A stretch of DNA of 34,736 nucleotides from Octopus bimaculoides (GCF_001194135.2 NC_069000.1:41187916-41222651), one strand, 5' to 3'. Counted from the first letter of the stretch, positions 4,250 through 27,859 are shown. Notes: a model not told the origin generated them from the sequence alone. A program made the numbers and translations.

Positions 4250-4860
4250 GAAAAAGTTCAGAACATTTCATATGAGACTGACAATGACTGGTGTAGTGGC
4301 CTTCATTGTTGTCTCTAATGTAATATCTCGAGTGGCCACAGAATTCAGTTTTGTCCCTGAATAATGCCTTTTCTACAGATTGAGCTGCCTTCTAACTTAC
4401 TAAGACTTTGTTTTTTGCTCGGTTAGCCCTAAGGCCCTTCAATTCTGGACCTTGCTTCCACACCTGAAACAACTCCTCAAGTTCTGGTTGTGACTCAGCT
4501 ATTAGAGCAAGGTCATAGAAGAGCTCCCTGGAGCAGCCTGTCTTGAATGCCTCTGTTATTGCCTGGAGGACTATGATGAACAAGAGAGGGCTGAAGACTG
4601 ATCCTTGGTGAACCCCTACTTCTACCTGGAATTCTTCACTATACTTGTTGCCAACCGTCACCTTACTGAGAGCATCCTTGTACATGGCTTGTACAGCTCT
4701 CACCAACCATTCATCTATCCCTAGTTTCCGCACTGACCACCAGATGAGGGATCAGGGGACCTTGCCAAAGGCTTTTTCCATGTCAACAAAAGCCAAGTAC
4801 AGAGGTTTATCTTTGGCTAAAAATTTCTCTTCATTATTTATTATTTTACTCAGAGATATG
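4250..4860 (-). mobile_element. RTE LINE reverse-transcriptase fragment, catalytically dead
   Basis: EEKFLAKDKPLYLAFVDMEKAF, then (frameshift) MRKLGIDEWLVRAVQAMY..GVHQGSVFSPLLFIIVL..ELFYDLALIAES, where YADD is reduced to YD. Confidence 0.9.
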
Positions 4861-6236: not shown

Positions 6237-6643
6237 AGGCGCATGAGTGGCTGTGTGGTAGGTAGCTTGCTTACCAACCACATGGTTCCGGGTTCATTCC
6301 CATTGCGTGGCACCTTGGGCAAGTGTCTTCTACTATAGCCTCGGGTCGACCAAAGCCTTGTGAGTGGATTTGGTAGACGGAAACTGAAAGAAGCCCGTCG
6401 TATATATGTATATGTATATATATATGTGTGTGCTTGTGTGTTTGTGTTTGTCCCCCCAACATCGCTTGACAACCGATGGTGGTGTGTTCACGTCCCTGTA
6501 ACTTCGCGGTTCGGCAAAAAAGACCGACAGAATAAGTACTAGGCATCCAAAGAATAAGTCCTGGGGTTGATTTTCTCGACTAAAGGCGGTGCTCCAGCAT
6601 GGCCGCAGTCAAATGGCTGAAACAAGTAAAAGAGTAAAGAGTA
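6237..6643 (+). mobile_element. CORE-like tRNA SINE (OR-type), full length
   Basis: Head GGCGCATGAGTGGCTGTGTGG..GGTTCATTCCC, CORE-like GGCACCTTGGGCAAGTGTCTT, internal TA/TG microsatellite and AGTAAAAGAGTAAAGAG tail. Colinear with 14369-14786. Confidence 0.85.
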
Positions 6644-6860
6644 TTAGTTCAAGACACAAACTGACAGACATTAATAACAAACCAATGTCGAACGAGGGAA
6701 ATATTTATGGTTATCACTTAAAAGACAGAGGATGAGTTCTCTCCCTTGGACTAAATTTTCTGCCAACTCAGAATTTGTTGTGCTTTGCAGGTTATCTCCC
6801 TTGGTCGCTAGCACACCCTCATAAGAAAAAAATCGATTTGAAAAGATTTTTCGTAATTCT

Positions 6861-8183: not shown

Positions 8184-9109
8184 NNNNNNNNNNNNNNNNN
8201 NNNNNNNNNNNNNNNNNNNNNNNNNNNNNNNNNNNNNNNNNNNNNNNNNNNNNNNNNNNNNNNNNNNNNNNNNNNNNNNNNNNNNNNNNNNNNNNNNNNN
8301 NNNNNNNNNNNNNNNNNNNNNNNNNNNNNNNNNNNNNNNNNNNNNNNNNNNNNNNNNNNNNNNNNNNNNNNNNNNNNNNNNNNNNNNNNNNNNNNNNNNN
8401 NNNNNNNNNNNNNNNNNNNNNNNNNNNNNNNNNNNNNNNNNNNNNNNNNNNNNNNNNNNNNNNNNNNNNNNNNNNNNNNNNNNNNNNNNNNNNNNNNNNN
8501 NNNNNNNNNNNNNNNNNNNNNNNNNNNNNNNNNNNNNNNNNNNNNNNNNNNNNNNNNNNNNNNNNNNNNNNNNNNNNNNNNNNNNNNNNNNNNNNNNNNN
8601 NNNNNNNNNNNNNNNNCATTATGTGGTCAGTTCTTCTTTCAGAAGACCTCTTTGAGAACCACGTAAAACAAGTAGCACAGTTAAATCAACCCATTTTCTT
8701 ATACCAGCTTCTGAGCTCCAAGCCTTTTCTGTTTCAAAGACATAAATGCCCGAAACTCATTCTATTTTCTCTTTTTTTTTTTTTTGTGTGTGTGATAAAT
8801 TGGTAAAAACTAATTTCAAGAATTTTTACGCCTTATATGAGAATTTGTGACACATGGTATTAGATGAGGACCACTCATATAAACATGGTGAAATGAATGT
8901 TAAAATGGGGGCTGGGATATATATAAATGTATCTACATCTGAACCTTTCACCCATTTTAACTAAGTTTCCATTGTTGGTGCTAGTATAGAATGCGATCTA
9001 CCACGGTGTCTACCTTACCTTTCAGATATTTCGGAGATAAAACACTTCAGATATTTCAGGAACGATGCAAATAAATCATCTTAGTCTTTACTCATCATCT
9101 TCCAGCAGA

Positions 9110-9762: not shown

Positions 9763-10642
9763 TATTTCTTTACAGCCTCATGAAAGTAAAATGGTTCACT
9801 TTGTCAAAAGTGAAAATGTTTTCCAAGAAAATGAGATTATGAAAGAACAGAGTATTCAATCATGATAATGAAGTAATGGGGGACAGTAAAGGATCAGTGT
9901 AACAAATTTATGTTAAATTAGTGTGAAATTGTACAAAAAGAAGTGTAACAGTAGTAACTCACCTCACACAATTAGACTCTTTTTAATGAGGTTTACATAA
10001 CATAATTACCTTTGATTGATTTGAACAACTATTGGAAGGTATAGATTAGTTTGTCATCTGAATTTTAAAAAATAATTAAAATTCATTTTTCACTCAGGTA
10101 AAGGGTGACCACAATTTTTGTTATGGAAAACATTTTGACATTTTGGTATCCTTTGAAAAGCACAACATATGGACATATGCCGTGACAAATAGAATAATTA
10201 TTATAAACAGATGATGATTTCAAAAGCAAAACCTGAAATTTGGAATAAAAAGCAAGGTTGATTAATATGACTCTGTATAGTAAAATCAATTCTAACAGAA
10301 AGTAAAATGCTGCCACACAGTTTCTATGGTGTTTTATCAATTGTGCCAACCATATTCTTACACATTTTATGATTTTTAAGTTAGGGACAGGCACTTTCAG
10401 AAGGTGGGGGTATCAGCCAATTATAATTATCACACCCAGCACTTTACTAGTTTGTATTTTATTGACCCTGAAAAGATGAAAGGAAAGGTCAATACAGAAT
10501 ATAGGGGACATCACAAGGTCCATTCTTCTACCAAATCTGCCAATGTATTACCTTCAAAATAATAACAATATTTGCAATAACAAGAAAAAATAAAAACAAC
10601 ATTAATAACAATTGTAACAACAATCAGACATATTTTAATGCT

Positions 10643-12582
10643 TCATTTCTTTAGATTCTCTTGCAAAATAGCAAGCAAATTAGATCTAAATTCTTCATCT
10701 TTCTTTTCCTGCCTCATCTTTTCATTCTTTTGTACTTCAATTAGTGTGGCTAATTGTTGATTTGTTTCCTTGAAAAGTTCTAGAATTTTAGTTTGGAAAT
10801 CTTTTAATTGTTTCTCTCGAATTTCAGCTTCTTGTTGGTATTGCTGAACATGGAGCTGGAACCAATGTGGTACAGCTTCACTATTGCTCTCATTCTTTTC
10901 TCTTCTGAGCTCACCCACAGCTAAAGGCAAAGGCGATTCCAACAAGTTCAGTGTCTTATTAGTTAATAACCCCTTAGAAAGTTCGGAATTTTGTCTAGAG
11001 AAAACGTTAGACCCAGTAGCACCCACGTTCAAGCAGGGAGTCTCTGAGTGACTGGTGACTGGCATATTGTGAATTTCAGAGCTTGTCTGATTACTATTTG
11101 AAGTTGTATTGTGTTGAAGGGATTTTGAAGAGTTGATATCAGAAGTGATATCAGAAGTGATATCTTGTAATCTTGTGATGTTTGAAATATCATGGTTAAT
11201 GCCATTATCACTTGCAGAATCACAGATGTTGTTCATATTTTCAGGAAGCACAGATGCCTGTTGACAAAAGAGCTCTAAACTACAATCATTTTTAGTTCCA
11301 ATCGGTTCTGTAGGTAATTCTCCTAAAACAATTTTGTTGCTGTTCTGTAAATTTGCACCATTAGCATCATGACCTAATATTGTGGCAGTTGTTGTTGTTG
11401 TTGTGCTAGTAGTAGTAGTAGAAGTGGGAGCTGTAGCTAACGGTGTTATCGATGATACTGCTGATGACAACAATAATGATGATGATGTTGATGATGATGA
11501 GGAGGAGGATGATGAAGATGATGATGACGATGACGACGATGATGGTATTGAAGATGATGATGATGATGATGATGTGGATGATGACACAGATGTTGATGAC
11601 ACTGGATTCAAATCCTGAGGAGTCGAAATTTCCATATATAAGTTTGCCTCGTTACTGCTAGGTTCCATTTTAATGCTGAAAATTCCAAGATTGGCATCTT
11701 CTGATGTCCAGCTTTGTTCATTCGCTTTCTCCATCACAGATATGCTTGGAATAGTTGTTTGTTCAAAAGAGTTGTCGGCCTCTTTCTTTATCTCCCTTTG
11801 AAGTTCTGAGTCAGTGATTACTTCGACACTGTTCTGGATATCATCATTGAACGATGGCATTACAGTGATGACACTACCATTACCATTAGGACTGGGACGG
11901 AAACTATTCTGCAAGGACAAGGAGCTGCTCTCCAAATTGTCCCAATACTGTTTGCACACCTCCTCTTCCAAACTTATTTGTTTGAGAAAATTTTTCTCCA
12001 CTACCTGGTTGTCTTCTTCTCCCTCTGATCTCAGTGACGAATTCCACACATTGTTTTGCCAAATTCTATCAGCCTGGTTATCTATATGATCTTGCAGAAG
12101 ATTTTCAGTATTCTCCACAGTACTTACATCACGGTAATTATCCAAAAGTATTCGAGAAGAAAAATTGTCAGGGATAATATGAGAATCACAAGATGAAAGC
12201 AGATCCGCTGAAGAGTTGGCACTATCAACATCAATGGCAAAAACTGAATCAAAGGGACTCGGAAGTGAAGATGAGTCTTCTAACCTTGGATTTTGGAAAG
12301 CATAGTACATCATGTTCAAGACACCAAGGAAAGGCCAAACTTGATTGCTGCTCTCTGAAGAATTCTTCGACATTTTCAAATGGACGTATTTTTGTTTGAG
12401 TTCTTGCCATTTCTGTTGGCATTGTAAAGATGTCGTGTTTAAACCAAGGAGTTTCATTTTGTTTGAAATTTCCATCCATAATTCAGACTCACTTGTGATA
12501 TGAGATGGTTTCATCATGAAATATTGTGTTAACGACCTCAGAAGAAGCTCTATGCTTTCTCTGGACCATACACCACAGTCAC
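10643..12582 (-). CDS. Terminal exon of the integrase-H2C2/Myb-SANT chimeric gene: Myb/SANT-like trihelix domain, S/T-rich linker and C-terminal coiled coil
   Basis: 1940-bp uninterrupted frame. Acceptor TTATTATTTGCAG|GT at 12582 (phase 1). W-SRESIELLL..WMEISNKMKLLGLNTTSLQCQQKWQELKQKY..WPF fits the Myb_DNA-bind_4-type pattern. Stop TGA at 10643-10645. Confidence 0.9.
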
Positions 12583-12659
12583 CTGCAAATAATAATAATA
12601 AGAATAAGAATGATAACAGTTTCAAAGTCTGGCACAAGGCCATCAATTGTGGAAGAGGG

Positions 12660-12828
12660 GCTAAGTTGATTACATCAATCACAGTGCTCAAATGGTGTTT
12701 ATTTATCACCTCTGAAAGGATGAAAGGCAAAATCAACCTCGGTGGAATTTGAACTCAGAACAGAATGACTGACGAAATGTCACTAAGTATTTTGGCTGGT
12801 GTGTTAACCATTCTGCCAAATCAGCGCC
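12660..12828 (-). mobile_element. Nin/Deu-like SINE copy in the last intron (source of the false N-terminus of the 697-aa ORF)
   Basis: GAAAGGATGAAAGGCAAAATCAACCTCGGTGGAATTTGAACTCAGAAC matches 5670-5720. Confidence 0.75.
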
Positions 12829-12832
12829 TTAC

Positions 12833-12865
<33 letters not shown>

Positions 12866-13109
12866 TAAGGATAATACAGCATTGTGGGCATGGCTTGAGC
12901 GAGGTGATTTTAAACATACCACCAAAAGCTGCACAAGACCAGGCTCTCACTAACAATTCAGTGAAGTATAACATCTATAAAACTTCTGACACCCAGAAAG
13001 AGTGTGGAAAATGTGACCCAATTGCTAAGTAGATGCGAAAGCCTTGCACAAAAAGAATACAAGCACCACCACGATAAAGTGTGTGTGTATCTTCATTGGT
13101 TCTTATGCC

Positions 13110-13260
13110 ATAAATACCAATAAGCCTAACAACAGATATAGGAACCAGGATGTCCACTGGTTCAACCCAATTTTCGGTTTGCATGTTTCAACTAAGAATG
13201 CTGGAAAATGTTTTGCTGCTTTGAACAAGTGTTTACCTAAATCTAATCAGTATCCTACAC
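13110..13260 (+). mobile_element. Degraded Penelope-like element fragment
   Basis: RNQDVHWFNPIFGLHVSTKNAGKCFAALNKCLPKSN matches the PLE motif R.IIWFNPP(F/Y)S..V.TN.G..FL.L..KHFP. Confidence 0.6.
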
Positions 13261-13458
13261 CAACTCTGCTAATGTAGAGCAGCATAAACAATAGCAAAAT
13301 GCAGCAAAGGTTCAATGACCCACCTACTGGATCTAGCGAACATTTGGATCTAAATACCAACCAAGGAGATGTAAACCGCATTGATAAACACCAATTATGA
13401 CCAATTTGTAGTAGTTATATATATATATTGTATTATATATATATATATATATATGGGG

Positions 13459-13892
13459 GTTGTCTACTCCTTACAGAGTTTGACCACCTCCTGCACCTAC
13501 ACCTTAGCCCTTTCATGGCGTCTGATGTGGCTTTTTAAACCAGACAGTGTTTTGAAAAAACACCCACACAGATTGCACCTCTGGTTTGCACTACCAATAC
13601 CTGCAGGTAAGTTCTGCTCATTGTGGATCCTAACATGTCTTTTAAGACCCCCACTGGATTTGCAAGCCCTCTGGCACACACCACATTCAAACGTGTGCAC
13701 AGACATATAATCAGAATAGCTGGTTGAAGTTTGTTTTCCATGGGTTCGCAGGTGAGATTTGAGGCCAGCCAAGGACAGACATGGTCTGTCACAGACTGTG
13801 CACACAAAAAAGTCCTTGTCATTCACCTTCTCGATCTTTACATTTTTCCTTAAATATCTCTTGAGCCCTGCTTGCGTCATCCTGGCCTCTTC
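13459..13892 (-). mobile_element. RTE-type LINE 3' end with three C2H2 zinc fingers, copy 2, ORF intact (13497-13891)
   Basis: EARMTQAGLKRYLRK..CTVCDRPCLSLAGLKSHLRTH..CGVCQRACKSSGGLKRHVRIH..CNLCGCFFKTLSGLKSHIRRH, no stop or frameshift. Near-identical to 1253-1693. Confidence 0.85.
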
Positions 13893-13895
13893 TGT

Positions 13896-13949
<54 letters not shown>

Positions 13950-14118
13950 ACAAAATGATGATGATGATGATCACAAGGATATTGTTTAAGATCAATATTA
14001 TGATGATGATGGTAGCATGTATAATTTCATTTACATGTGTGTGGCAGGTATGTGAGCGGGAAAAAAATTGATGGAAATGTAAGAATGAAAATATAGATAA
14101 TCAATAAGACTAACTAAC

Positions 14119-14176
14119 TTGTAGTCTGCATGGAACTGGTCTCCTTCCAGGATGGATTTTCATTGGGCAACTGTAC
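14119..14176 (-). CDS. Exon of chimeric gene (VQLPNENPSWKETSSMQTT), phase 0 to 1
   Basis: Acceptor CTGCACTTTTTTAG|GTA, donor ACAA|GTTAGT, 58 nt. Supplies exactly the phase change needed between 15739 and 12582. Confidence 0.7.
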
Positions 14177-14368
14177 CTAAAAAAGTGCAGTGAAAAAACT
14201 GTTACACATGTCGAAATGAAATGATTTGTGACTCCCATGAAAAAATGTAAACTTGTACTTTAATTCATCCATGAGTTAGATTGAGTGAAAATAATAATTA
14301 ATTCAGGAGAAATTATTAAGTAGAAGCAATAATCGACAAATGCTAGATGAAATGAAGATATGAAACGA

Positions 14369-14786
14369 AGGCGTAGGAGTGACTGTGTGGTAAGTAGCTT
14401 GCTTACCAACCACATGGTTCCAGGTTCAGGCCCACTGCGTGGCACCTTGGGCAAGTGTCTTCTACTATAGCCTCGGGCCGACCAAAGCCTTGTGAGTGGA
14501 TTTGGTAGACGGAAACTGAAAGAAGCCCGTCGTATATATGTATATATATATACTATGTGTGTGTATATGTTTGTGTGTCTGTGTTTGTCTCCCCCTACCA
14601 ACATCGCTTGACAACCGTTGCTGGTGTGCTTACGTCCCCGTAATTTAGCGGTTCGGCGAAAAGAGACCGATAGAATAAGTACTAGGCTTACAAAGAATAA
14701 GTCTTAGGGTCGATTTTCTCGACTGAAGGCGGTGCTCCAGCATGGCTGCAGTCAAATGACTGAAACAAGTAAAAGAGTAAAAGAGT
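14369..14786 (+). mobile_element. CORE-like tRNA SINE (OR-type), full length
   Basis: Colinear with 6237-6643. Confidence 0.85.
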
Positions 14787-15039
14787 ATATACATTCCCAA
14801 ATGGATTGCTTATGACACACGTCTCTGTTGCAACTCTTGCTTGCCAGTAGAAGTCATAAATGAGCTGAGTAGAGTCAGTGGATATGTAATTAAAAGAGTT
14901 CACATAATTATATTTATTTATTTAACATGAAGAACCTGATGATATTTGTGTGCATGTGTGCATTTGCATATGTACATGTGTGTATAAGTAACTGCATGTA
15001 CGTATGCATGTGTGTGTCGCAGGGTGGATAACTAGATCT

Positions 15040-15135
15040 TTTATCTTCTACTAGTTTCAGTCATTAGACTACAGCCATGCTGGGGCACAGCCTTGAAGAA
15101 TTTTAGTCAAATGAAAAGACCCCAGTCTTTATTTT
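15040..15135 (-). mobile_element. 3' fragment of CORE-like SINE
   Basis: TTTCAGTCATTAGACTACAGCCATGCTGGGGCACAGCCTTGAAG is the reverse complement of the SINE 3' region. Confidence 0.6.
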
Positions 15136-15738
15136 CTTAAATAGACAGATAGGTATAATACAAAAAATAACAGATGAATGGATTATATGGTCTTCATTAA
15201 AAGACTGTATTGTGATGTATCATTGTACATTCAGTTACGTAAGACATACAACAGCCATAAGATTATACAATACATTACAATGCAATAACCTCGTAAATCC
15301 TCAAGCAACCATATGCCGGTCAAAATTTGATATGTTGTTAGACTGGCAAGCTCAACAGCATATCACATGAAACTCCATGTATGATAAACTGTAAAGAATC
15401 ATAAGTGTTTAAAATCCAAGAGACTTCAAACGCAACATACAGACACAGACACACAGAGCTCAACCTGTCTGCCTTGATGCTTGTTCTCACCAGTGCTTAC
15501 AAAAAAATAACCTATTAAATCCGGAAACAACATTCTCTGACTACTATACTACACTCCATCTACCTAAAAACACACAAATAGCTTCAACAGCAAACTGGTT
15601 CCAGATCTAATTAAAGCGTAGCATATCTAAGAATCAAGCTCCAATGGTTACTTCGCAACATCTGATGGAATCTGGCTGTGTCTTAAAACTGACCAGGCCA
15701 ACTCAACAACATAAATAATAACAAGAAACAGAACTTAC

Positions 15739-15789
15739 AATGTCATTTTGATACTGCCGAAGTTTCTGGCAAACTTCACACTCAGATAC
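15739..15789 (-). CDS. Exon of chimeric gene carrying the CxxC half of the integrase zinc finger (VSECEVCQKLRQYQNDI)
   Basis: Acceptor CTTTTTATTCTAACAG|GTA, donor ATT|GTAAGT, 51 nt, phase 0 to 0. Completes KKW-VSECEVCQ. Confidence 0.85.
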
Positions 15790-16059
15790 CTGTTAGAATA
15801 AAAAGATGCATTACAAACGTGTGTGTGTGTGTGTGTGTGCTTGCGTGAGAGAGAGAGAGAGAGACTGTGAGTGTATAGGTGCTTGAAATTACTATATAAT
15901 GACGGTAGTGAGCGTCTCTATAACGCCTATTGTTACTAATTCTTGATACTTCAAATACTGTACTCCCATGAAATAAAAAAACAAAGAACAAAATACAAAA
16001 CATGAACAGGCTCTAGAGAGTTTCTATGTTTTTTTGGTAAGTGAATACATTAAAAGTAC

Positions 16060-16390
16060 AGGCATAGCTAAGTGGTTAAGAAGCTTGCTTAACAACCACA
16101 AGGTCTCAGGCGCAGTACAACTGTGAGACATCTTGGGCATGTGGCTTCTACTACAGCCTTATGTGAGAAATTGGCAGAGAGAAACTGTGTAGAAGGTCAG
16201 TGAGGGTGACTGTCTATCCTGACACTGCTTGAAACAAAAAATCAAATGGGTCTGTGTTTGTGATCTGTCACTAAGTGGTGCAACAGAGGTCACTAATGTG
16301 GGAACCAGGCTTAATAAATAAGTACTGGGGTCAATATAACCAACTTTAAAAAATCCTTCAAAATAGTGACCCAACATGCTTGCCATTCAA
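16060..16390 (+). mobile_element. Old degenerate CORE-like SINE
   Basis: GGCATAGCTAAGTGGTTAAGAAGCTTGCTT..ACCACAAGG..CTTGGGCATGTGGCTTCTACTACAGCC, then AATAAGTACTGGGGTCAAT. Confidence 0.6.
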
Positions 16391-16483
16391 TAAAGGGAGC
16401 AAGTAATTTATTCTTTTGCTATATATATTTTATCTTTTTATTTTCTCACCTGACAGTATTTTTGAAAGTAAAGGATTGCTTAC

Positions 16484-16671
16484 CCATTTTTTAATGTCTT
16501 CAGTCAGTGATGACCAATAGTATTTTGAAGTAACCCGAAGCAAAGTTTTAGTCTCTCTCATATGTAACCCACTGGGGAGAATGTGGGAATACTTAAATAC
16601 TTTCAATTGGTCAGCCAGTTTGTCCAAAACAATTTTGGGTTCTTCATCTATTTTCTCAGAGATTGACGAAA
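16484..16671 (-). CDS. Exon of chimeric gene carrying the HH half of the Gypsy/Ginger-type integrase zinc-binding domain
   Basis: Acceptor TATTTTTTTCTCCTAG|TT, donor TGG|GTAAGC, 188 nt, phase 1 to 0. Encodes PKIVLDKLADQLKVFKYSHILPSGLHMRETKTLLRVTSKYYWSSLTEDIKKW. Confidence 0.85.
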
Positions 16672-17257
16672 CTAGGAGAAAAAAATACAAAACAAAGTTA
16701 GAATGATTTTATGAATCAAGCAGTCAATCAACAGGTTACTGATCATACATTAGCAAGAAAGTAACGTGTCTATAATAATTGATGCATGAGAACAGTAAAG
16801 GTCATGCTTATAATAATTGGTGCATTGAGAAAAATGTACATGTTTTGTCTTGCAAAAGATGGGTTACAGCAAATATTCTGCTCAATACCTCAGATTTGCT
16901 TGTCAGTTGTTAGTTGAACATTCTCTTGGTGGCTGATGATATGTGCATCCCTGACCATGAGCAGAAGTAGTGCAGGAGTATCATAGTCACGTGTTGAGAG
17001 GAATTCTTTGAAGTTTGAATAACTCCTCTCTGCCATGATGACTAAAACACTGAAGAGTTACCAGTTTCTCACTTAGTTCATCGCAAGGCTATGGTAGAAT
17101 AAATATTTCTCAGGAAGATCAAAGCCAGGTCGATCTGTTTGTGATGCTAATTTCTTAATTACACAGTCATTCCATGCACACAACAAAATATGGTAGGAAT
17201 TTATAAATAGAGGCAGAGTGGAAATGAATTTGAAAGACAGATTTATCATATACATAC

Positions 17258-17411
17258 CATTTGTTGCTAATTTAGCCAGTATCCGAGCATCGACTGAATT
17301 CTGTGCAATCTTCCACTGATAGGCCCGTAGCTTATCAGAACTTAGTCTCTTCTGTCGATCATATTTGTTTGTTATTGATTTTGGAGAATTCTTTGCAATA
17401 CTAATAGCAGA
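17258..17411 (-). CDS. Exon of chimeric gene (SAISIAKNSPK..RAYQWKIAQNSVDARILAKLATN)
   Basis: Acceptor GTTTTCCTTTTCCAG|TCT, donor ATG|GTATGT, 154 nt, phase 0 to 1. Only this frame is open. Confidence 0.75.
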
Positions 17412-17932
17412 CTGGAAAAGGAAAACATTTCACTGCATCAGTATATAAACACACACACACACACAGAGGCAACATATTAACACAGTTCAACCTGTCACAT
17501 GGTCAGATTGTCAGCAATTAAACTGGTAATCCAATGAAGCTTGCTTAGTGAGGAGGGTAATTTGGTCACCCTGCGAGAAGAAAATCAAAACCCATCAAAG
17601 GGTGGAGGAACTCGTAAGACTCAACAGCCTTCCAACAGTGTGTATACAGAAGAATTAACCTCAATGATGAAAATCCTTGAGCCAGGGTCATAACGAAGCC
17701 ATGGGGAGCAGCATGGCAGATGTGATGGTGGACATATTGATCTTCATTCAGTGAAACCACATGACAGTCTAGGTGGGAGAACCTCTTCAGCCAATGGTCA
17801 GTGAAGGGTCAACCAATCCAATTAGCAGATTGCTGCCACTTGATAGAACTGGCAATTCATCAACTCACTTTAGTTACTTAAGAACACAATGGAGTTCTGA
17901 GTCTCATAGTACACCAATTGAAGTTGGATAAC

Positions 17933-17978
<46 letters not shown>
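17933..17978. repeat. (GTA)n microsatellite
   Basis: Direct reading. Confidence 0.95.
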
Positions 17979-17979
<1 letters not shown>

Positions 17980-18614
17980 TGTGTAATGGTAGTCTCTCAA
18001 GTCAGAGAGAGACAGTACCAAGGAGCAAAATGTTTTCCACTTATAGCCCCAGGCCAAACAATAATTTGTGAGCGAATTTGGAAGACAGAAACTGAAAGAA
18101 GCCTGTCATGTGAACATATAAGCATGTGTGTATGTGTGTGTGTGTGTGCATGTGTTTGCACATGTGCGTGCAAATGTTCACAAACTTACAGAGTTATGCT
18201 ACAATGATACGACTGTTTGTAACTGAGCTGCAAGTGATGATATCAGCATTTAAGGCTTGAACTGCAAATCAGTGAAGTTTGTGTCCTGGAATTAAAATAT
18301 CTTCACTTGCAAAACAATTAAGAGATAGTGATGGCAAGAGCATGAAGCCACAGAAATCCTCCTTCAAATATTCAATCCACTTCATCTAAACCTCGCTAGA
18401 ATGAAAAAATAGACATTAAAATATCAAATGGACGAATGATAACATGAGTTCCATAATATCTCTCAGACAAACATTGTATGGAATGGAGTAACTAAGATTG
18501 GTAATGTGTGTGTGTGTTTACATATGTGTATGTGTGAAAGAGATAGAAAGAGAGAGAGACAAAGGAAAAGTGAGAGATACAGAGAAAGAGTATTATGCAG
18601 GTTTCTATATTGAT

Positions 18615-18808
18615 CGGTGGCACGTAAAAGCACCCACTACACTCTCGGAGTGGTTGGCGTTAGGAAGGGCATCCAGCTGTAGAAACTCTGCCAAATCAGA
18701 TTGGAGCATGGTGTCGCCTCCTGGTCCACCAGTCCTCAGTCAAATCGTCCAACCCATGCTAGCATGGAAAGCGGACGTTAAACGACGATGATGATGATGA
18801 TGATGATG
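18615..18808 (+). mobile_element. RTE LINE 3' UTR fragment with (GAT)n tail
   Basis: GGTGGCACGTAAAAGCACCCACTACACTCTCGGAGTGGTTGGCGTTAGGAAGGGCATCCAGCTGTAG..GGACGTTAAACGACGATGAT; matches 20630-20811, which follows RTE coding sequence. Confidence 0.85.
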
Positions 18809-18870
18809 TGTGTGTGTGTGTGTGGCCACATGTGAGAATATTCATGTTTTTAAGACACTATAATACTCAC

Positions 18871-18984
18871 TTTTAAACGATTTCTAGCAATCTGTGACCT
18901 GACCCTCTGTTGATCCAAATAACGCCTGTATTTTTCTGGGTCTCGTTCTTTCAACTGCCGACGCCATATTGTACTGCGGTTGAC
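18871..18984 (-). CDS. Most 5' identifiable exon of chimeric gene (VNRSTIWRRQLKERDPEKYRRYLDQQRVRSQIARNRLK), basic helical segment
   Basis: Acceptor TTTCATAACAG|GTC, donor AAA|GTGAGT, 114 nt, phase 0 to 0, open and protein-like. No in-frame ATG, so an upstream exon is missing. Confidence 0.7.
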
Positions 18985-19445
18985 CTGTTATGAAATATAA
19001 AAGAATATAGTTGTATGAAGATTAAAATGTTTTAAAATTGAAATATGTATGCATTTAAGAGCAAATGAGAGGAAAAGCTAAACTTCAGCTATACAAGACA
19101 GAAATAACTGCCATATCTCCCTGCTGCCTTATATATACAATGTGAGGGCTACAATATGGTAGCAAATCTACTGTCTTGTGTATGTATAAATAAGCCAAAA
19201 GGGAAACTTGTATATGATAGCAAGACCTGACACAAATAGTTGTCATATATTCTGAAAACCCACATCCTACTGTTTCATGTATGTATAAATGCAGGAACCA
19301 ACAAAGGTGACTTTCACATTCTATTGTCTAATGTCTGTATATATGTTGGTAAGAACCAACGTGTAGCTCTGCACATTACAACTTTCTAAAAAATAGCAGA
19401 TACATCTCCATATCACACAATGTTGTCACACACACATATATATAC

Positions 19446-19476
<31 letters not shown>

Positions 19477-19513
19477 GAGACACACATGTATATACACACA
19501 CACGCATATAAAC

Positions 19514-19980
19514 ACAAGAGGGTACCCAAAAGTATCAGGAAACGATCTGTGTGAGACAAGCCCATTGTAGTTCAGGCTTCCACTGCTAGAAGCCACTTGA
19601 TGCAACCCTCAGGCATCAGTCTGCCGATCAGCATTGTACACTCAGGTCATACTGTCATGTGATGCATCTTTATCTTGCAGTGCTTCTCCCCTGTTCATCA
19701 ATGTTTGCAATGTCTGAAACGAAGGAAGAGCATGCTTCTGTGAAATTCTGTTTTCTGCTGGGGAAAACGGAGGCCGAAACAGTTGTCATGCTTCAAACAG
19801 TTGTCATGCTTCAAACAGTTGTCATGCTTCAAACAGCTTACCAGGATGCTGTCATGAGCAAAACACAAGTTTATGAGTGATTTTTATGCTTTAGGAATGG
19901 TCACTAGTTGCTTGAGGACCAACCTCATTCAGAGCAACTGTTGACCTCCCAAATGAGTGGAAACATCATGAAAATTCATA
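19514..19980 (+). mobile_element. Mariner-like transposon 5' fragment (pseudogene)
   Basis: TIR-like ACAAGAGGGTACCCAAAAGT. MSETKEEHASVKFCFLLGKTEAETVVMLQTAYQDAVMSKTQVYE*FLCFRNG..LEDQPHS matches the mariner HTH N-terminus. Confidence 0.8.
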
Positions 19981-20029
19981 AACTGATTTTTAGTTTTTTT
20001 ATAATTCCTTGAGTATCTCTTTGGAGTTT

Positions 20030-20811
20030 ATCATGGATGTGTTATGTCAGTGTGCATACTCGACAGAGTGTAAGTACCTTGAGAGAAAAGTTGGACTTAA
20101 GAAGCATCAGACGTGGTGTGCAAGAGAGACGACTGCGCTGATATGGTCATGTGTTGTGAATAGATGAGGACAGCTGTGTGAAAAAGAGTCACACCCTGGC
20201 AGTTGACGGAACCTGTGGAAGACCTGGGATGAGGTGGTGAAGCACAACCTTCAAACACTGGGCCTCACCGGGGCGATGACTAGTGACCGAGACCTTTGGA
20301 AATATGCTGTGCTTGAGAAGATCTGGCAAGCCAAGTGAGACCATAACCCGTGGTCTATGCCAGTGCTCTATAACCAGCCCACTTAAGAGTACCCTTCAAT
20401 CATTGAATAATAAACTATGCTTATGAAGACTGTTGAGTCAAGTGAAATTGAAATTGCTGTCATGGCCGTTGATAGTACTGCCTGACTGGCACCCATGCCA
20501 GTGGAACGTTAAAAGCAACATTCAAGCGTGATTGTTGCCAGGGTCACCTGACTTGCTCCTGTGCTGGTGGCACGTAAAAAACACCATTCAAGCGTGGTTG
20601 TTGCCAGTGCCACCGGACTGGCTCCCATGCAGGTGGCACGTAAAAGCACCCACTACACTCTCAGAGTGGTTGGCGTTAGGAAGGGCATCCAGCTGTAGAA
20701 ACTCTGCCAGATCAGATTGGAACCTGGTGCAGCCTTTTGGCTTGCCAGCCCTGTCAACCCGTCCAACCCATGCCAGCATGGAAAGCGGACGTTAAATGAC
20801 GATGATGATGA
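20030..20811 (+). mobile_element. 5'-truncated RTE LINE: ORF end, tandem-repeat 3' UTR and (GAT)n tail
   Basis: VSVHTRQSVSTLREKLDLRSIRRGVQERRLR*YGHV..KTWDEVVKHNLQTLGL..SDRDLWKYAV, then three ~60-65-bp UTR units and a GATGAT tail. Confidence 0.9.
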
Positions 20812-20935
20812 TTATATATATATTAGATAAATATTATATACATATATTATATACATATATATTATATAAATATCATATACATATGTATTATATACATACA
20901 TATATATATATATGTACATGTATATATATACATAC

Positions 20936-20998
<63 letters not shown>
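20812..20998. repeat. (TA)n-rich microsatellite running into gap 20999-21540
   Basis: Direct reading. Confidence 0.95.
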
Positions 20999-22169
20999 NN
21001 NNNNNNNNNNNNNNNNNNNNNNNNNNNNNNNNNNNNNNNNNNNNNNNNNNNNNNNNNNNNNNNNNNNNNNNNNNNNNNNNNNNNNNNNNNNNNNNNNNNN
21101 NNNNNNNNNNNNNNNNNNNNNNNNNNNNNNNNNNNNNNNNNNNNNNNNNNNNNNNNNNNNNNNNNNNNNNNNNNNNNNNNNNNNNNNNNNNNNNNNNNNN
21201 NNNNNNNNNNNNNNNNNNNNNNNNNNNNNNNNNNNNNNNNNNNNNNNNNNNNNNNNNNNNNNNNNNNNNNNNNNNNNNNNNNNNNNNNNNNNNNNNNNNN
21301 NNNNNNNNNNNNNNNNNNNNNNNNNNNNNNNNNNNNNNNNNNNNNNNNNNNNNNNNNNNNNNNNNNNNNNNNNNNNNNNNNNNNNNNNNNNNNNNNNNNN
21401 NNNNNNNNNNNNNNNNNNNNNNNNNNNNNNNNNNNNNNNNNNNNNNNNNNNNNNNNNNNNNNNNNNNNNNNNNNNNNNNNNNNNNNNNNNNNNNNNNNNN
21501 NNNNNNNNNNNNNNNNNNNNNNNNNNNNNNNNNNNNNNNNGAGGGGGGGAGAGGGGGGGAGAGAGAGAGAGGGAGGGAGAGACGCACACACGAACGTGCC
21601 TTATACAACTTACATCCTTTTCCCAGCCGCACGGTTCACACGCTGCATGCAAAAAAGCACAGTAGAATTTCTGTTGCAGGAAATAGCAACAGAAATGACG
21701 AACGAAAACGATTGCAACAGCTTTTCTATAACATATACATGACAGACACAGCGCGTATTGACTCAAATGGAAAGAAAATGAGCCTATAAATTGAAATAGC
21801 ATAATGAATTTAGACCTTGTTGAGCCCATAAGCTATATAAATACTTCAGATCACTCGTTTAAATAACTACAGCAGAAAGTCTCGTAAAAATTGAAAAAAT
21901 AAGCCTTTCATTAATTTTGAGCTTCTTATTGTATCTTGTTTAGCTAGCTAAAGCCTAAATCCGGTAGTGATCACCATCAACAAGCGTGTAGCTACAAGGT
22001 CTCTTAAACAGTTGATGATAGTACCCAGACCTTAAATCACACCTCGCCGTCTTTAAAAGGGGTGGGGAAACACTGTTTGAAATAATGAACAGTGAGAAAT
22101 AGTTTTTGATCTGAGTCTAACCTGGAGGTAAACGACTTAAATGCTCACATAGCAAAATACAAATTATTT

Positions 22170-22830
22170 TAACTCTTTACGTTCTGTGTTGATAGTCCGA
22201 GGTGAACATTACCTTTCATCCTTTCGAGAATCGATAAACTAAAGTACCAGTGAAGTACTGAGGTCGATGTAATCGACTTGTGCTCTTCTCTCAAAACTAT
22301 TTGTGCCAAATTTTGAAACAATTATTATTCAAAACCCGCCGAGGTCAACTTTAAGTTTCATCCTTTTGGAGTAGATAAAATAAAGTTTAACACTGGAATC
22401 GATGTAACTGACTTAACCCTTTCTCTAAAATAGCTGGCCTTCTGCCAAAATTTGAAAGAGTTATTTATTTAAAAGGCTGGAGAGTTAAAGAAAATCAAAT
22501 GTCTTGCAGCAGTCAAAAGTTACGCCTCATTAAGTTGTGAGTTCAAATCAGTAAGTCAACTTCGTCTTTCCAGAGTCGATCAAGTACTGAAATCGATTAA
22601 ATCGGATATATATATCCCATCCCACTATGAAGCCTGAGTTCTTTGCACCTATGTCAAAAATCATTAGTGTTTTATGTCGTCCATTATGTTCCGAGTTCAA
22701 ATTGCCGTCGAGGTCGACATAGCATTTTACCCTTCCAAGGGTCGAAAAGAAAGACAAGCACTTTGGGTCAGTTTAATCACTCGCTCTTTTTCTCCGTCTT
22801 CCCCACATAATATCTGGCTTTGTGTCTCGA
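22170..22830 (+). mobile_element. Four head-to-tail degenerate Nin/Deu-like SINE copies
   Basis: Recurring GAGGTC(G/A)AC..TTTCATCCTTT..GATAAA/GTCGA motifs near 22199, 22341, 22553 and 22710. Confidence 0.65.
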
Positions 22831-23186
22831 CTATACATTCCCCACTCACTGGTCTAGTGCCTATGTCAGAGATGCTTAATTCAGAAGCAATTCTCTTATT
22901 ATTAAACGTGAAGAAACAATAGCAAAATAGCAAGAAAAAAAAAGATAAACAGAATTAAAAGCCTCAAGAAATTAGAGGAAAATTTAAATATAACTCCACC
23001 CACTTCAAAAATGAAGAAAAAATTTAAATGTAACAAAGAATTTTCCAACGAACCCGTGATTTTCGGAACGTATGAAACATTTGTTGATAACTATCGTCCA
23101 TGTTTGTTTTGTTGCTAATATTACTTCGCTGCATCTCGCTAGGTGTCGCTTGATGCATGATGTGAATGCGTGCGATCGACAGGCGG

Positions 23187-24299: not shown

Positions 24300-24838
24300 G
24301 GAGGGGGTGGCTTCGATCTCAAGAGCTTGGGTATACCAAAGTATCCATCTTCAGTTTGAAATTCTTTGGGCTTATGTGCTTTTACGCCTAGCTAGCTTGA
24401 CAGCAATAGTACAAATTTCTATACCACGGACATCATTGCAGCACGCTACTGTTTTCTATATTGAGCATCTCTGGATTTCATCTATTCACTATATNNNNNN
24501 NNNNNNNNNNNNNNNNNNNNNNNNNNNNNNNNNNNNNNNNNNNNNNNNNNNNNNNNNNNNNNNNNNNNNNNNNNNNNNNNNNNNNNNNNNNNNNNNNNNN
24601 NNNNNNNNNNNNNNNNNNNNNNNNNNNNNNNNNNNNNNNNNNNNNNNNNNNNNNNNNNNNNNNNNNNNNNNNNNNNNNNNNNNNNNNNNNNNNNNNNNNN
24701 NNNNNNNNNNNNNNNNNNNNNNNNNNNNNNNNNNNNNNNNNNNNNNNNNNNNNNNNNNNNNNNNNNNNNNNNNNNNNNNNNNNNNNNNNNNNNNNNNNNN
24801 NNNNNNNNNNNNNNNNNNNNNNNNNNNNNNNNNNNNNN

Positions 24839-25559: not shown

Positions 25560-26373
25560 ATTGTGTGTGTATGGGTTCGCTTCTTATGTTGTTTGTGTCC
25601 ATGCCCTTTATATAGATTTAGCTACTTATTTATTTTTAAATCTCAGGTCTATGACAAATATGTTTATTATTATTATTATTATTATTATTATTGTTTAGTA
25701 GTTTTATTTTTATAACGTGCTTTCACTTCACTACCGAGCGCAGCTCTGTGCACCTTGGGTATGTGCTGTGGTTTGCTGTGGTGCTCTTATGGTTACTGTA
25801 TTGAAAGTGTTTTGCGTAAGATGTGTGCAGTGCCCAGTAGTGCAATTTTCAGTATGTTATATATATTTGTAAGTCCTGGTGTTTTTGTTATGTATTTGTC
25901 TGAATATTTTTTTATTATACNNNNNNNNNNNNNNNNNNNNNNNNNNNNNNNNNNNNNNNNNNNNNNNNNNNNNNNNNNNNNNNNNNNNNNNNNNNNNNNN
26001 NNNNNNNNNNNNNNNNNNNNNNNNNNNNNNNNNNNNNNNTATACTTAAGGCACCTACTATGATAGGATTTGTTTCTGTTTTTAGATTCCACATTCGAGTT
26101 ACCTCTATTTCCAGGTCTTTGTATTTTGAAAGTTTTTCCATTTCTTTTAGAGAAACGTTGTCATCTGCTGGTATTGATACATCAATTAGAAAGCATTTTT
26201 TTCCTTCATGATCTTTGACAACTATATCTGGTCTATTTTCCTTAATTTCTCTATCTGTGTGTATTGGCATATCCCAGAGTATGGTTGCTTTCTCGTTTTC
26301 TGTGACCTTTTCTGGCGTGTGTTTATACCATCTTTTTTCTGTTGTTATTCCATAGTGTTGGCATAGATTATTA

Positions 26374-26529: not shown

Positions 26530-27070
26530 CAGAGCGTCATGTTCGTCGATGCTACCCTTGGCGGCGAACTAGCATGCTTTTTAGAAAAACATTAAATAAG
26601 GCTAACCTACGGGTTAATGTCGTAGAGAGACCTGGTGCCCCTATAAAATCCCTGATCTGTAGAACTGAACCCTTTGGTAAGACCCCATGTACGGAGAACA
26701 AATGTGTTGTATGTAAGATGAACCCACGGGTTAACTGTAAGGTTAGGAATGTAGCGTATAACTTACGATGTACTGAGGGGCGGTGCAGAAACATGACAAC
26801 TACCTACATTGAAGAGACTGCACGCAGCATAGGAAAGCGTATAAGTGAACATTGGCGAGAGCACAAAGAGAAAAGCTCGTCAGTGCTCTACCAACATGCT
26901 GAGGCAGAACATGGAGGCTCGATTAATAGCATAGAAGTTAAAGTATTATCAACGCATAGAATTGACACGACACTTAGATCAAAGTGGCTATACACATAAC
27001 AGGAGACAGACCGAGCCTCAATAGAAAACACGAATGGAACAATAACACCCACCAACACACCACATGATTA
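26530..27070 (+). mobile_element. Penelope-like element 3' part: Cys-rich linker and GIY-YIG endonuclease (pseudogene)
   Basis: VMFVDATLGGELA, then (shift) VVERPG..CTENKCVVC..NCKVRNVAYNLRC..C..YIEETARS..RISEH..LYQH..H, then (shift) IKVAIHI..PSLNRKHEW. Confidence 0.85.
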
Positions 27071-27302: not shown

Positions 27303-27859
27303 NNNNNNNNNNNNNNNNNNNNNNNNNNNNNNNNNNNNNNNNNNNNNNNNNNNNNNNNNNNNNNNNNNNNNNNNNNNNNNNNNNNNNNNNNNNNNNNNNN
27401 NNNNNNNNNNNNNNNNNNNNNNNNNNNNNNNNNNNNNNNNNNNNNNNNNNNNNNNNNNNNNNNNNNNNNNNNNNNNNNNNNNNNNNNNNNNNNNNNNNNN
27501 NNNNNNNNNNNNNNNNNNNNNNNNNNNNNNNNNNNNNNNNNNNNNNNNNNNNNNNNNNNNNNNNNNNNNNNNNNNNNNNNNNNNNNNNNNNNNNNNNNNN
27601 NNNNNNNNNNNNNNNNNNNNNNNNNNNNNNNNNNNNNNNNNNNNNNNNNNNNNNNNNNNNNNNNNNNNNNNNNNNNNNNNNNNNNNNNNNNNNNNNNNNN
27701 NNNNNNNNNNNNNNNNNNNNNNNNNNNNNNNNNNNNNNNNNNNNNNNNNNNNNNNNNNNNNGATGTGGCGGCGTTGTTGGTGGTCATCGTTGGACGAAGC
27801 TATTGATGTGTCGCTGGCTGCCGCTGCTGCTGCTGTCGTGTGGTACACGGAACAGATCT

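What the first reader, a model, noticed from the sequence alone, without database searches (positions are those of the whole stretch)
10643..18984. Hidden spliced gene fusing a Gypsy/Ginger integrase zinc finger (H2C2) to a Myb/SANT trihelix domain, with no DDE core
Seen: six minus-strand exons with canonical AG/GT sites and a continuous phase chain (0-0-1-0-0-1) give about 834 aa. Splicing 16484-16671 to 15739-15789 rebuilds YSHILPSGLH-x29-CEVCQ, i.e. H-x6-H-x29-C-x2-C with the T..R+..+YYW..+..D+..WV pattern. Established: this spacing and pattern define the integrase zinc-binding domain (Integrase_H2C2, PF17921) of Ty3/Gypsy retrotransposons, Ginger DNA transposons and GIN1. The downstream W..E...LL/W.EIS.KM..G..T..QC..KW..LK..Y/WPF pattern is the Myb/SANT-like domain (PF13837) of Harbinger ORF-derived and MSANTD/trihelix proteins. 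Inference: the integrase homology stops near DIVQLPNENPSW, where the PI.V..PW approach to the DDE core would be, and is replaced by a trihelix domain. Intact frames and splice sites amid heavily decayed transposons suggest a domesticated chimeric transcription or chromatin factor rather than a mobile element.
Basis: partly seen in the sequence, partly recalled or inferred. Interest (0 to 1): 0.85.

Follow-up and report, generated by a model that had tools for sequence, protein, structure and literature searches.

The report
Cephalopod gene: integrase zinc finger plus Myb
This is a real, conserved octopus gene that kept only the small zinc-binding domain of a transposon integrase and joined it to a Myb/SANT-like DNA-binding domain; sister species annotate it under uninformative names and nobody has studied it.

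Summary
The six minus-strand exons all have AG/GT sites and give an open 834-aa frame. Pfam finds Integrase_H2C2 (49.2 bits, cut-off 25.5) and Myb_DNA-bind_4 (48.2 bits, cut-off 27), with no integrase core.

It is a host gene, not a mobile element:
- It is single-copy in the window and collinear with the Octopus sinensis locus.
- That locus carries an 862-aa model with the same junctions, auto-named "serine-rich adhesin for platelets-like".
- Argonauta hians has the same seven-exon layout.
- A contiguous 2.5-kb contig from a more distant relative (46% identity) encodes both domains in one frame.
- dN/dS is 0.18 overall and 0.07 over the N-terminal 314 aa.
- The four zinc ligands and the Myb tryptophans are conserved. 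An AlphaFold model of the zinc domain (pLDDT 85) best matches the Ty3 and foamy-virus integrase N-terminal domains.

The most likely role is a multimeric nuclear DNA-binding or chromatin factor. That part is inferred, not shown.

Known domesticated integrases (GIN1, KRBA2, SCAND3, Imagin) keep the core fold, so this is a new variant of a known kind. It is unpublished but not unannotated. Two frogs carry an analogous gene.

The parts
23054..23158 (-). ATG at 23158 is the start used in the O. sinensis model. The in-frame ATG at 23101 (MDDSYQQ...) is the start used in the Argonauta model and matches the start of the distant relative. GT donor follows 23054.
   Evidence: tblastn of P0151 aa 1-17; sequence and frame; identical 105-nt exon in O. 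sinensis.
18871..18984 (-). Exon 1 (114 nt). Start of the highly conserved basic N-terminal helix (VNRSTIWRRQLKERDPEKYRRYLDQQRVRSQIARNRLK).
   Evidence: AG/GT sites; 114 nt in A. hians and O. sinensis too; confident long helix in AF2, pLDDT 80-88; dN/dS 0.03-0.07.
17258..17411 (-). Exon 2 (154 nt). Rest of the N-terminal basic region. No detectable homology outside this gene family.
16484..16671 (-). Exon 3 (188 nt). First part of the integrase zinc-binding domain, carrying both His ligands and the YYW motif. The Pfam match starts at 16609.
   Evidence: Pfam PF17921; integrase queries hit only here; alignment A3 places H30 and H37 in near-invariant columns.
15739..15789 (-). Exon 4 (51 nt). 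Carries the C-x2-C half of the zinc-binding domain. The Pfam match ends at 15763. A phase-0 intron therefore splits the domain.
   Evidence: the same 51-nt exon is present in A. hians and O. sinensis.
14119..14176 (-). Exon 5 (58 nt). Encodes VQLPNENPSWKETSSMQTT, the remnant of the LP-x5-W linker that leads into the integrase core in Ty3. Ends in phase 1.
   Evidence: Alignment to Ty3 and A3; the W is conserved in all orthologs; 58 nt in all three octopods.
10643..12582 (-). Exon 6 (1940 nt including the stop). Contains the Myb/SANT-like trihelix domain, a long poorly conserved Ser/Thr-rich region and a conserved C-terminal helical block.
   Evidence: the acceptor lies at the same position in two distant relatives, L005 and L006.
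12326..12568 (-).
   Evidence: Pfam 48.2 bits; W229, W259 and W282 invariant in alignment A1; weak match to plant GT-1 trihelix structures; 0 non-synonymous versus 5 synonymous changes against O. sinensis.
11380..11620 (-). Ser/Thr homopolymer-like tract. Probably the reason for the automatic O. sinensis name 'serine-rich adhesin for platelets-like'.
   Evidence: Translation; name; length varies between species.
10646..10870 (-). Conserved C-terminal block of 75 aa (PHWFQ...LATLI...EKKDEEF...), presumed helical or coiled-coil.
   Evidence: 99% aa identity to O. sinensis and O. vulgaris, 80% to Argonauta, 47% to the distant relative; dN/dS 0.05-0.10. The helical character is inference.

Best explanation
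Shown: this is a seven-exon host gene with coding sequence at window 10643-23158 on the minus strand. It is conserved in octopods, and in more distant relatives that are probably decapodiform cephalopods. Its product is 850 or 869 aa, depending on which ATG is used. From N- to C-terminus it has: (1) a strongly conserved basic helix with no known relatives; (2) the N-terminal HHCC zinc-binding domain of a Ty3/Gypsy- or Ginger-type integrase, cut off exactly where the catalytic core would begin; (3) a Myb/SANT-like trihelix domain of the Myb_DNA-bind_4 type; (4) a long, fast-evolving Ser/Thr-rich region; (5) a conserved C-terminal helical block. The integrase-derived part sits on three small exons. 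A phase-1 intron joins it to the Myb exon, so the chimera is made by splicing.

Inferred mechanism: the protein is a nuclear DNA-binding or chromatin factor. The trihelix domain would read DNA. The basic helix would supply nuclear import or extra DNA contact. The HHCC domain would act as a zinc-dependent multimerisation module, as it does in integrases, where it helps assemble tetramers. The C-terminal helix would add a second self-association surface. The catalytic DDE function is gone, so it cannot cut or join DNA.
For: Gene model: canonical splice sites and an open frame; first exon found.
Domains: PF17921 at 49.2 bits and PF13837 at 48.2 bits, with no rve. No core remnant anywhere in the window.
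Orthology: the O. sinensis model P0164 (862 aa) has both domains and exon lengths 105/114/154/188/51/58/1919, against 105/114/154/188/51/58/1940 here. The locus and both flanks are collinear. A. hians P0151 has exons of 48/114/154/179/51/58/1922 nt.
Transcript-type evidence: the Logan contig L002 (2514 nt) encodes P0003 (731 aa) with both domains in one uninterrupted frame. Two genomic contigs 57-59% identical to it carry an intron acceptor exactly before the Myb exon.
Selection: against O. sinensis, dN/dS is 0.18 overall, 0.074 for aa 1-314 (16 synonymous, 5 non-synonymous changes) and 0.05 for the C-terminus, and the Myb domain has no non-synonymous change. Against Argonauta it is 0.22 overall, 0.12 for H2C2 and 0.07 for Myb.
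Zinc domain: H, H, C and C fall in the near-invariant columns of a 53-sequence integrase alignment. The AF2 model has pLDDT 85. Its best Foldseek matches are Ty3 integrase (rmsd 2.0 A over 62 columns, probability 1.00) and PFV integrase (probability 0.99).
Against: - No expression data for this species were available. The junctions rest on comparative models and on one contig from another species whose library type I could not verify.
- Function is inferred from domains only. The domesticated integrase Imagin is cytosolic (PMC12863088), so an integrase-derived domain does not guarantee a nuclear role.
- Foldseek E-values are weak (0.08-0.19) because the domain is small, and the AF2 alignment was built from integrase sequences.
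- AF2 on the two-domain region with five orthologs was poor (pLDDT 47).
- dS against Argonauta is near saturation (1.1-1.9).
- The O. vulgaris assembly shows a rearranged or duplicated 3' part of the gene.
Confidence: 0.75

Rival explanations
1. The protein is an anti-transposon factor rather than a conventional transcription factor. The retained HHCC domain would pair with the N-terminal domain of incoming Gypsy or Ginger integrases and poison intasome assembly. The Myb domain would tether it to chromatin or to element DNA.
For: The HHCC domain is the part of integrases that makes inter-subunit contacts, and here it is kept under purifying selection without the core. The surrounding genome is rich in retroelement debris. 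This is inference only.
Against: There is no sign of the fast, positively selected evolution typical of restriction factors in the HHCC domain (dN/dS 0.06-0.12). No partner was identified. Identity to any one integrase is only 25-40%.
Confidence: 0.12
2. The chimera is a gene-prediction artefact. A small gene carrying the zinc finger and a separate Myb gene would lie next to each other and be joined only by in-silico splicing.
For: No transcript data exist for this species. The O. vulgaris annotation calls only the 3' part as a separate 546-aa protein.
Against: Exon 5 ends in phase 1 and needs the phase-1 start of exon 6. The 58-nt length is kept in three octopods. Contig L002 carries both domains in one uninterrupted frame, while related genomes have an intron at that point. 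The O. vulgaris models start at an internal Met of the same long exon.
Confidence: 0.05
3. It is part of a mobile element, or a decaying copy of one: a Gypsy/Ginger integrase fragment next to a Harbinger-type Myb ORF.
For: Both domains are common in transposons, and the window is full of repeats.
Against: It is single-copy in the window. It sits at an orthologous position with conserved flanks. Introns are conserved, dN/dS is well below 1 and no DDE core is present. The only direct repeats near it are short SINE-like elements inside introns.
Confidence: 0.02

Closest known systems
Domesticated integrase genes: GIN1, KRBA2, SCAND3/ZBED9, NYNRIN and crustacean Imagin
   Same: All are single-copy, multi-exon host genes derived from a Gypsy- or Ginger-type integrase. 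They retain the H2C2 zinc finger, have lost mobility and evolve under purifying selection (PMC12863088, PMC3575427, PMC3424704).
   Different: Those genes keep the integrase core fold, even where the DDE residues are lost as in Imagin. Here the core is absent altogether and a Myb/SANT-like domain follows instead.
Myb_DNA-bind_4 / trihelix proteins: plant GT-1 and GT-2, animal MSANTD and ZSCAN20-type proteins, Harbinger Myb-like ORF derivatives
   Same: The domain exceeds the Pfam cut-off, the tryptophan pattern is conserved, and the best solved-structure match is GT-1. The layout of a Myb domain, then a disordered region, then a C-terminal helix resembles many family members (my own knowledge).
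   Different: Among the 150 listed hits of the exhaustive search, none outside this gene family combines this domain with an integrase zinc finger. No Harbinger transposase partner was seen.
Uncharacterised frog genes: P0025 (Discoglossus pictus) and P0165 (Bombina bombina)
   Same: An integrase H2C2 domain is followed directly by a Myb/SANT-like domain with no integrase core. The two frog proteins are 73% identical and both 464 aa long.
   Different: The Myb domain is of the Myb_DNA-bind_5 (NAIF1-like) type. Identity to the octopus protein is only 26% over 175 aa. The frog proteins lack the N-terminal basic helix and the C-terminal block. They probably represent an independent fusion.
Host-transposase fusion transcription factors ('transposase capture', Cosby et al. 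2021, cited from memory)
   Same: A transposon-derived domain is joined by splicing to a host-type domain to make a new regulator.
   Different: In those cases the captured part is usually the transposase DNA-binding domain. Here it is the integrase oligomerisation and zinc module, and the DNA binder is the Myb domain.

Membership tests
Integrase_H2C2 domain (PF17921) | Profile score above Pfam's gathering cut-off | tested here: met
   49.2 bits against 25.5. Also on record for P0164, P0151 and P0003.
Integrase_H2C2 domain (PF17921) | H-x(3-7)-H-x(23-32)-C-x2-C zinc ligands | tested here: met
   The spacing is H-x6-H-x29-C-x2-C in all four full-length orthologs. The ligands fall in near-invariant columns of alignment A3.
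Integrase_H2C2 domain (PF17921) | Helical fold of the integrase N-terminal domain | tested here: met
   AF2 pLDDT is 85, and above 95 in the core. The top Foldseek hits are Ty3 and PFV integrase, with probability 0.99-1.00 and rmsd 2.0-2.6 A, but E-values of only 0.08-0.19.
Integrase_H2C2 domain (PF17921) | Binds zinc and promotes multimerisation | not testable with these tools
   Needs purified protein.
Myb_DNA-bind_4 / trihelix (PF13837) | Profile score above the gathering cut-off | tested here: met
   48.2 bits against 27.
Myb_DNA-bind_4 / trihelix (PF13837) | Three regularly spaced conserved tryptophans or aromatic residues | tested here: met
   W229, W259 and W282 (869-aa numbering) are invariant in A1.
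Myb_DNA-bind_4 / trihelix (PF13837) | Sequence-specific DNA binding | not testable with these tools
   Only a weak sequence match to GT-1 structures (E=0.013).
Ty3/Gypsy or Ginger mobile element | DDE catalytic core (rve) after the zinc finger | tested here: not met
   No rve hit at E<=1. tblastn with six integrases finds only exon 3.
Ty3/Gypsy or Ginger mobile element | Multiple copies bounded by LTRs or TIRs | tested here: not met
   Single copy in the window with no flanking long repeats. The locus is orthologous and collinear in O. sinensis. Genome-wide copy number could not be counted.
GIN1/KRBA2/SCAND3/Imagin-type domesticated integrases | Retained integrase core fold | tested here: not met
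GIN1/KRBA2/SCAND3/Imagin-type domesticated integrases | Single-copy, intron-containing, syntenic gene under purifying selection | tested here: met
Harbinger Myb-like ORF / NAIF1 | Paired with a DDE_Tnp_4 (HARBI1-type) transposase gene | not tested
   No ORF of 100 aa or more in the window looks like one, but the window was not scanned systematically.

The most novel reading that the evidence does not exclude
The isolated integrase HHCC domain may be a portable module that DNA-binding proteins have captured repeatedly and independently in animals. The examples found here are Myb_DNA-bind_4 in cephalopods, Myb_DNA-bind_5 in basal frogs, CARF/ALS2CR8 in crayfish and C2H2 arrays in other animals. 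If so, this octopus gene would be the best-supported member of an unrecognised class of 'integrase-NTD capture' regulators. Their shared mechanism would be zinc-dependent multimerisation of a DNA binder.
Probability: 0.3. Interest if true: 0.7.

Novelty: new variant of a known kind. Interest (0 to 1): 0.5.

Why it matters
Domestication of transposon proteins is a known source of new regulators, but examples outside vertebrates and flies are few. Integrase-derived examples described so far keep the catalytic-core fold. This gene shows that the roughly 60-aa zinc-binding N-terminal domain can be retained alone, under purifying selection (dN/dS 0.06-0.12 for this domain), when spliced onto a Myb/SANT-like DNA-binding domain. 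It appears to be a lineage-restricted putative regulator in cephalopods, a group known for unusual genome and neural evolution. It also corrects a misleading automatic name ("serine-rich adhesin for platelets-like"). Finally, it gives a concrete, testable candidate for asking what an integrase N-terminal domain does outside an integrase.

Tried and rejected
1. The first word-indexed protein search, with aa 1-409, returned only a truncated O. vulgaris model and missed the O. sinensis ortholog. The exhaustive HMMER search and a second search seeded with P0003 were needed.
2. The O. vulgaris locus L001 was expected to hold the upstream exons. Instead homology starts inside the last exon, at aa 268, and the segment is tandemly repeated. 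I left this unresolved and used O. sinensis.
3. Synteny through the Na/K-ATPase neighbour of the Argonauta gene gave nothing inside the window.
4. Sequence searches of the PDB gave only weak, though congruent, matches to GT-1, Ty3 and PFV integrase (E=0.01-0.3).
5. AF2 on the five-ortholog alignment of the N-terminal 343 aa was poor (pLDDT 47) and was not used for fold search.
6. Alignment A2, which mixed H2C2 and Myb segments, was misaligned by MAFFT and was discarded.
7. No family was found for the N-terminal basic helix or the C-terminal block.
8. Gypsy versus Ginger origin of the zinc finger could not be resolved from about 60 aa. There is no YPYY motif upstream.
9. Literature searches for the architecture, the locus name and the run accessions found nothing.
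10. The species of the window and of contigs L002, L005 and L006 could not be determined with the tools. The window differs from O. sinensis at dS of about 0.13.


Full report
**1. Observation**

I rebuilt the six exons exactly as listed. Each has a pyrimidine tract plus AG upstream and, except the last, GT downstream. Together they are 2505 nt, in frame, and translate to 834 aa ending in TGA at 10643-10645. The start phases 0-0-1-0-0-1 are correct. The zinc-finger motif H-ILPSGL-H-x29-C-EV-C appears only after joining 16484 to 15789.

Pfam scores Integrase_H2C2 at 49.2 bits (cut-off 25.5, aa 111-161) and Myb_DNA-bind_4 at 48.2 bits (cut-off 27, aa 194-274). No integrase-core (rve) family appears even at E<=1.

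The frame has no start codon because one exon was missed. Window 23054-23158 (-) encodes MHQATPSEMQRSNISNKTNMDDSYQQMFHTFRKSR followed by a GT donor. The coding sequence therefore spans 10643-23158 in seven exons. It gives 869 aa from the first ATG, or 850 aa from the ATG at 23101. The Argonauta model and the distant relative start at the position of the second ATG.

**2. It is a gene, and an orthologous one**

An exhaustive HMMER search of 1.84 billion representatives found two full-length relatives and otherwise only single-domain hits.

- Argonauta hians. P0002 and P0151 are named "uncharacterized protein LOC115221371". P0151 (841 aa) maps to locus L003 as seven exons of 48/114/154/179/51/58/1922 nt.
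- Octopus sinensis. A second search found P0164, 862 aa, named "serine-rich adhesin for platelets-like", with both Pfam domains. Its exons are 105/114/154/188/51/58/1919 nt. The window has 105/114/154/188/51/58/1940 nt.
- Collinearity. The window is collinear with the O. sinensis locus through exons, alignable intron segments (73-94% identity) and both flanks. The O. sinensis introns are much longer: the gene spans 35.6 kb there against 12.5 kb here.
- Copy number. Within the window the gene is single-copy. The only repeats near it are short dispersed elements inside introns.

The window comes from an Octopus species other than O. sinensis (dS about 0.13).

**3. The two halves are joined in a transcript-type sequence**

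P0003 (731 aa, 46% identical over the first 308 aa) lies on a 2514-nt Logan contig, L002, from run SRR27666080. That contig has a 316-nt leader and one uninterrupted frame containing both Pfam domains.

Two genomic contigs, L005 and L006, are 57-59% identical to P0003. Both carry a polypyrimidine tract plus AG exactly where the octopus exon 6 begins (...TTCTTGCAG|GTAATAGTGGCTCCTGG). The intron before the Myb exon is therefore old, and L002 is a spliced product.

I could not establish the species or library type of these runs. From the identity levels I infer non-octopod coleoids.

**4. Selection**

| Comparison | Region | dN/dS |
|---|---|---|
| vs O. sinensis (dS 0.13, unsaturated) | whole protein | 0.18 |
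| | aa 1-314 (16 synonymous, 5 non-synonymous changes) | 0.074 |
| | Myb domain (5 synonymous, 0 non-synonymous changes) | 0 |
| | C-terminal 75 aa | 0.05 |
| | middle region | 0.24 |
| vs Argonauta (dS 1.1-1.9, near saturation) | whole protein | 0.22 |
| | N-terminal region | 0.03 |
| | H2C2 | 0.12 |
| | Myb | 0.07 |
| | C-terminus | 0.10 |
| | middle region | 0.38 |

The pattern is four constrained blocks separated by a fast-evolving Ser/Thr-rich region whose length varies between species.

**5. Anatomy of the integrase-derived part**

In a 53-sequence alignment with integrase zinc fingers, the four ligands and the T and W positions fall in the near-invariant columns. The KIVL strand that precedes the first helix in integrases is present. 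The upstream LYY/YPYY strand is not.

After C-x2-C the protein keeps the LP-x5-W spacing seen in Ty3 (LPIAEGRW against LPNENPSW). The W is conserved in all orthologs. The first catalytic Asp and everything after it are missing. tblastn with six core-containing integrases hits only exon 3 and nothing else in the 34.7 kb.

AlphaFold2 with this alignment gives pLDDT 85, and above 95 for residues 11-70. Foldseek against the PDB ranks the Ty3 intasome integrase first (7q5b, rmsd 2.0 A over 62 columns, probability 1.00). PFV integrase comes next (3l2q, probability 0.99). E-values are only 0.08-0.19, as expected for a domain this small.

A phase-0 intron splits the domain between the HH and CC halves. 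This position is shared by all three octopod genomes.

**6. The Myb part and the rest**

The three tryptophans (W229, W259, W282 in 869-aa numbering) are invariant from octopus to the distant relatives. The best solved-structure match is the plant trihelix protein GT-1 (E=0.013).

The N-terminal basic segment is the most conserved part of the protein. It is 59% identical to P0003, against 47% for H2C2 and 36% for Myb. It was the only confidently modelled element in the five-sequence AF2 run, as one long helix with pLDDT 80-88. It has no detectable relatives. The C-terminal 75 aa are likewise conserved and family-specific.

**7. How it most likely works**

Shown: the gene is a non-mobile, selected, spliced chimera with an intact HHCC domain, an intact trihelix domain and no catalytic core.

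Inferred: it is a nuclear DNA-binding or chromatin factor. The trihelix domain, and perhaps the basic helix, would contact DNA. The HHCC domain would serve as a zinc-dependent multimerisation module, which is its established role in retroviral and Ty3 integrases. The C-terminal helix would add a second self-association surface.

A less likely alternative is a decoy that pairs with transposon integrases. Artefactual fusion and mobile-element readings are poorly supported (see the rival explanations).

**8. Comparison with what is known**

Known domesticated integrases (GIN1, KRBA2, SCAND3, NYNRIN, and Imagin in PMC12863088) keep the core fold. This gene does not, so it is not a member of that group in the strict sense, although it arose by the same kind of process.

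It is a member of the Myb_DNA-bind_4 family by profile score. No paper in the searchable library mentions the two Pfam accessions together, the locus or the run accessions. A survey of transposon-derived transcription factors that includes Octopus does not list it (PMC10027918).

Zinc fingers of this type without a core also occur next to other domains:
- ALS2CR8/CARF in crayfish (P0005);
- C2H2 arrays (P0008, P0009, P0058);
- Myb_DNA-bind_5 in the frogs Discoglossus and Bombina, whose proteins are 73% identical and both 464 aa.

The cephalopod gene therefore looks like one instance of a recurrent but undescribed pattern.

**9. Verdict**

The gene is annotated in sister species under uninformative names and has not been studied. 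I rate it a new variant of a known kind, of moderate interest.

Noticed in passing
window 13497-13880 (-), within repeat 13434-13951; second copy at 1225-1745: Intron 5 of the gene contains an intact 127-aa ORF with three C2H2 zinc fingers (zf-C2H2, 49.9 bits). It lies inside a dispersed repeat, and a frame-broken copy 92% identical sits 12 kb away. It is probably part of a transposable element.
   Followed up: partly
window 4392-4733 (-): A reverse-transcriptase fragment scores exactly at the Pfam cut-off (RVT_1, 29.6 bits). This is retroelement debris downstream of the gene.
   Followed up: partly
window 14369-14788 = 6237-6644; 18616-18801 = 20632-20815: Short SINE-like dispersed repeats lie inside introns and flanks. 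Many copies, some in tandem, occur in the O. sinensis and O. vulgaris loci.
   Followed up: partly
window 8184-8616, 20999-21540, 24495-24838, 25921-26039, 27303-27761, 31147-31590: Six assembly gaps (2341 N in all) are mostly flanked by TA/CA microsatellites. One lies inside intron 0 of the gene, so the true length of that intron is unknown.
   Followed up: no
L001 (O. vulgaris OX597833.1:11893470-11915110), positions 1-1369 and 9965-11822: The 3' two-thirds of the last exon occurs at least twice in tandem, about 10.5-12 kb apart. Each copy is annotated as a hypothetical protein of about 546 aa. O. sinensis shows no such duplication. This may be a real rearrangement or an assembly artefact.
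   Followed up: partly
L003 and L007 (Argonauta hians): There are two loci 96-98% identical, either haplotigs or a recent duplicate. Model P0002 skips 69 nt of the zinc-finger exon by using an internal CAT|GTGAGG donor, but the genomic exon is intact in both loci.
   Followed up: yes
proteins P0025/P0165 (frogs), P0005 (crayfish), P0008/P0009/P0058: Other predicted animal proteins carry the integrase zinc finger without an integrase core, fused to Myb_DNA-bind_5, ALS2CR8/CARF or C2H2 arrays. The frog pair is conserved at 73% identity and equal length.
   Followed up: partly
window 25857-26270 (-) and 26574-26999 (+): Two ORFs of 137 and 141 aa upstream of the gene have no Pfam match. The first is interrupted by an N gap and resembles, from memory, the C-terminal region of invertebrate retroelement proteins.
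   Followed up: partly
window 11380-11620 (-): A Ser/Thr homopolymer-like tract in the last exon varies in length between species. It probably caused the automatic name 'serine-rich adhesin for platelets-like' in O. sinensis.
   Followed up: partly
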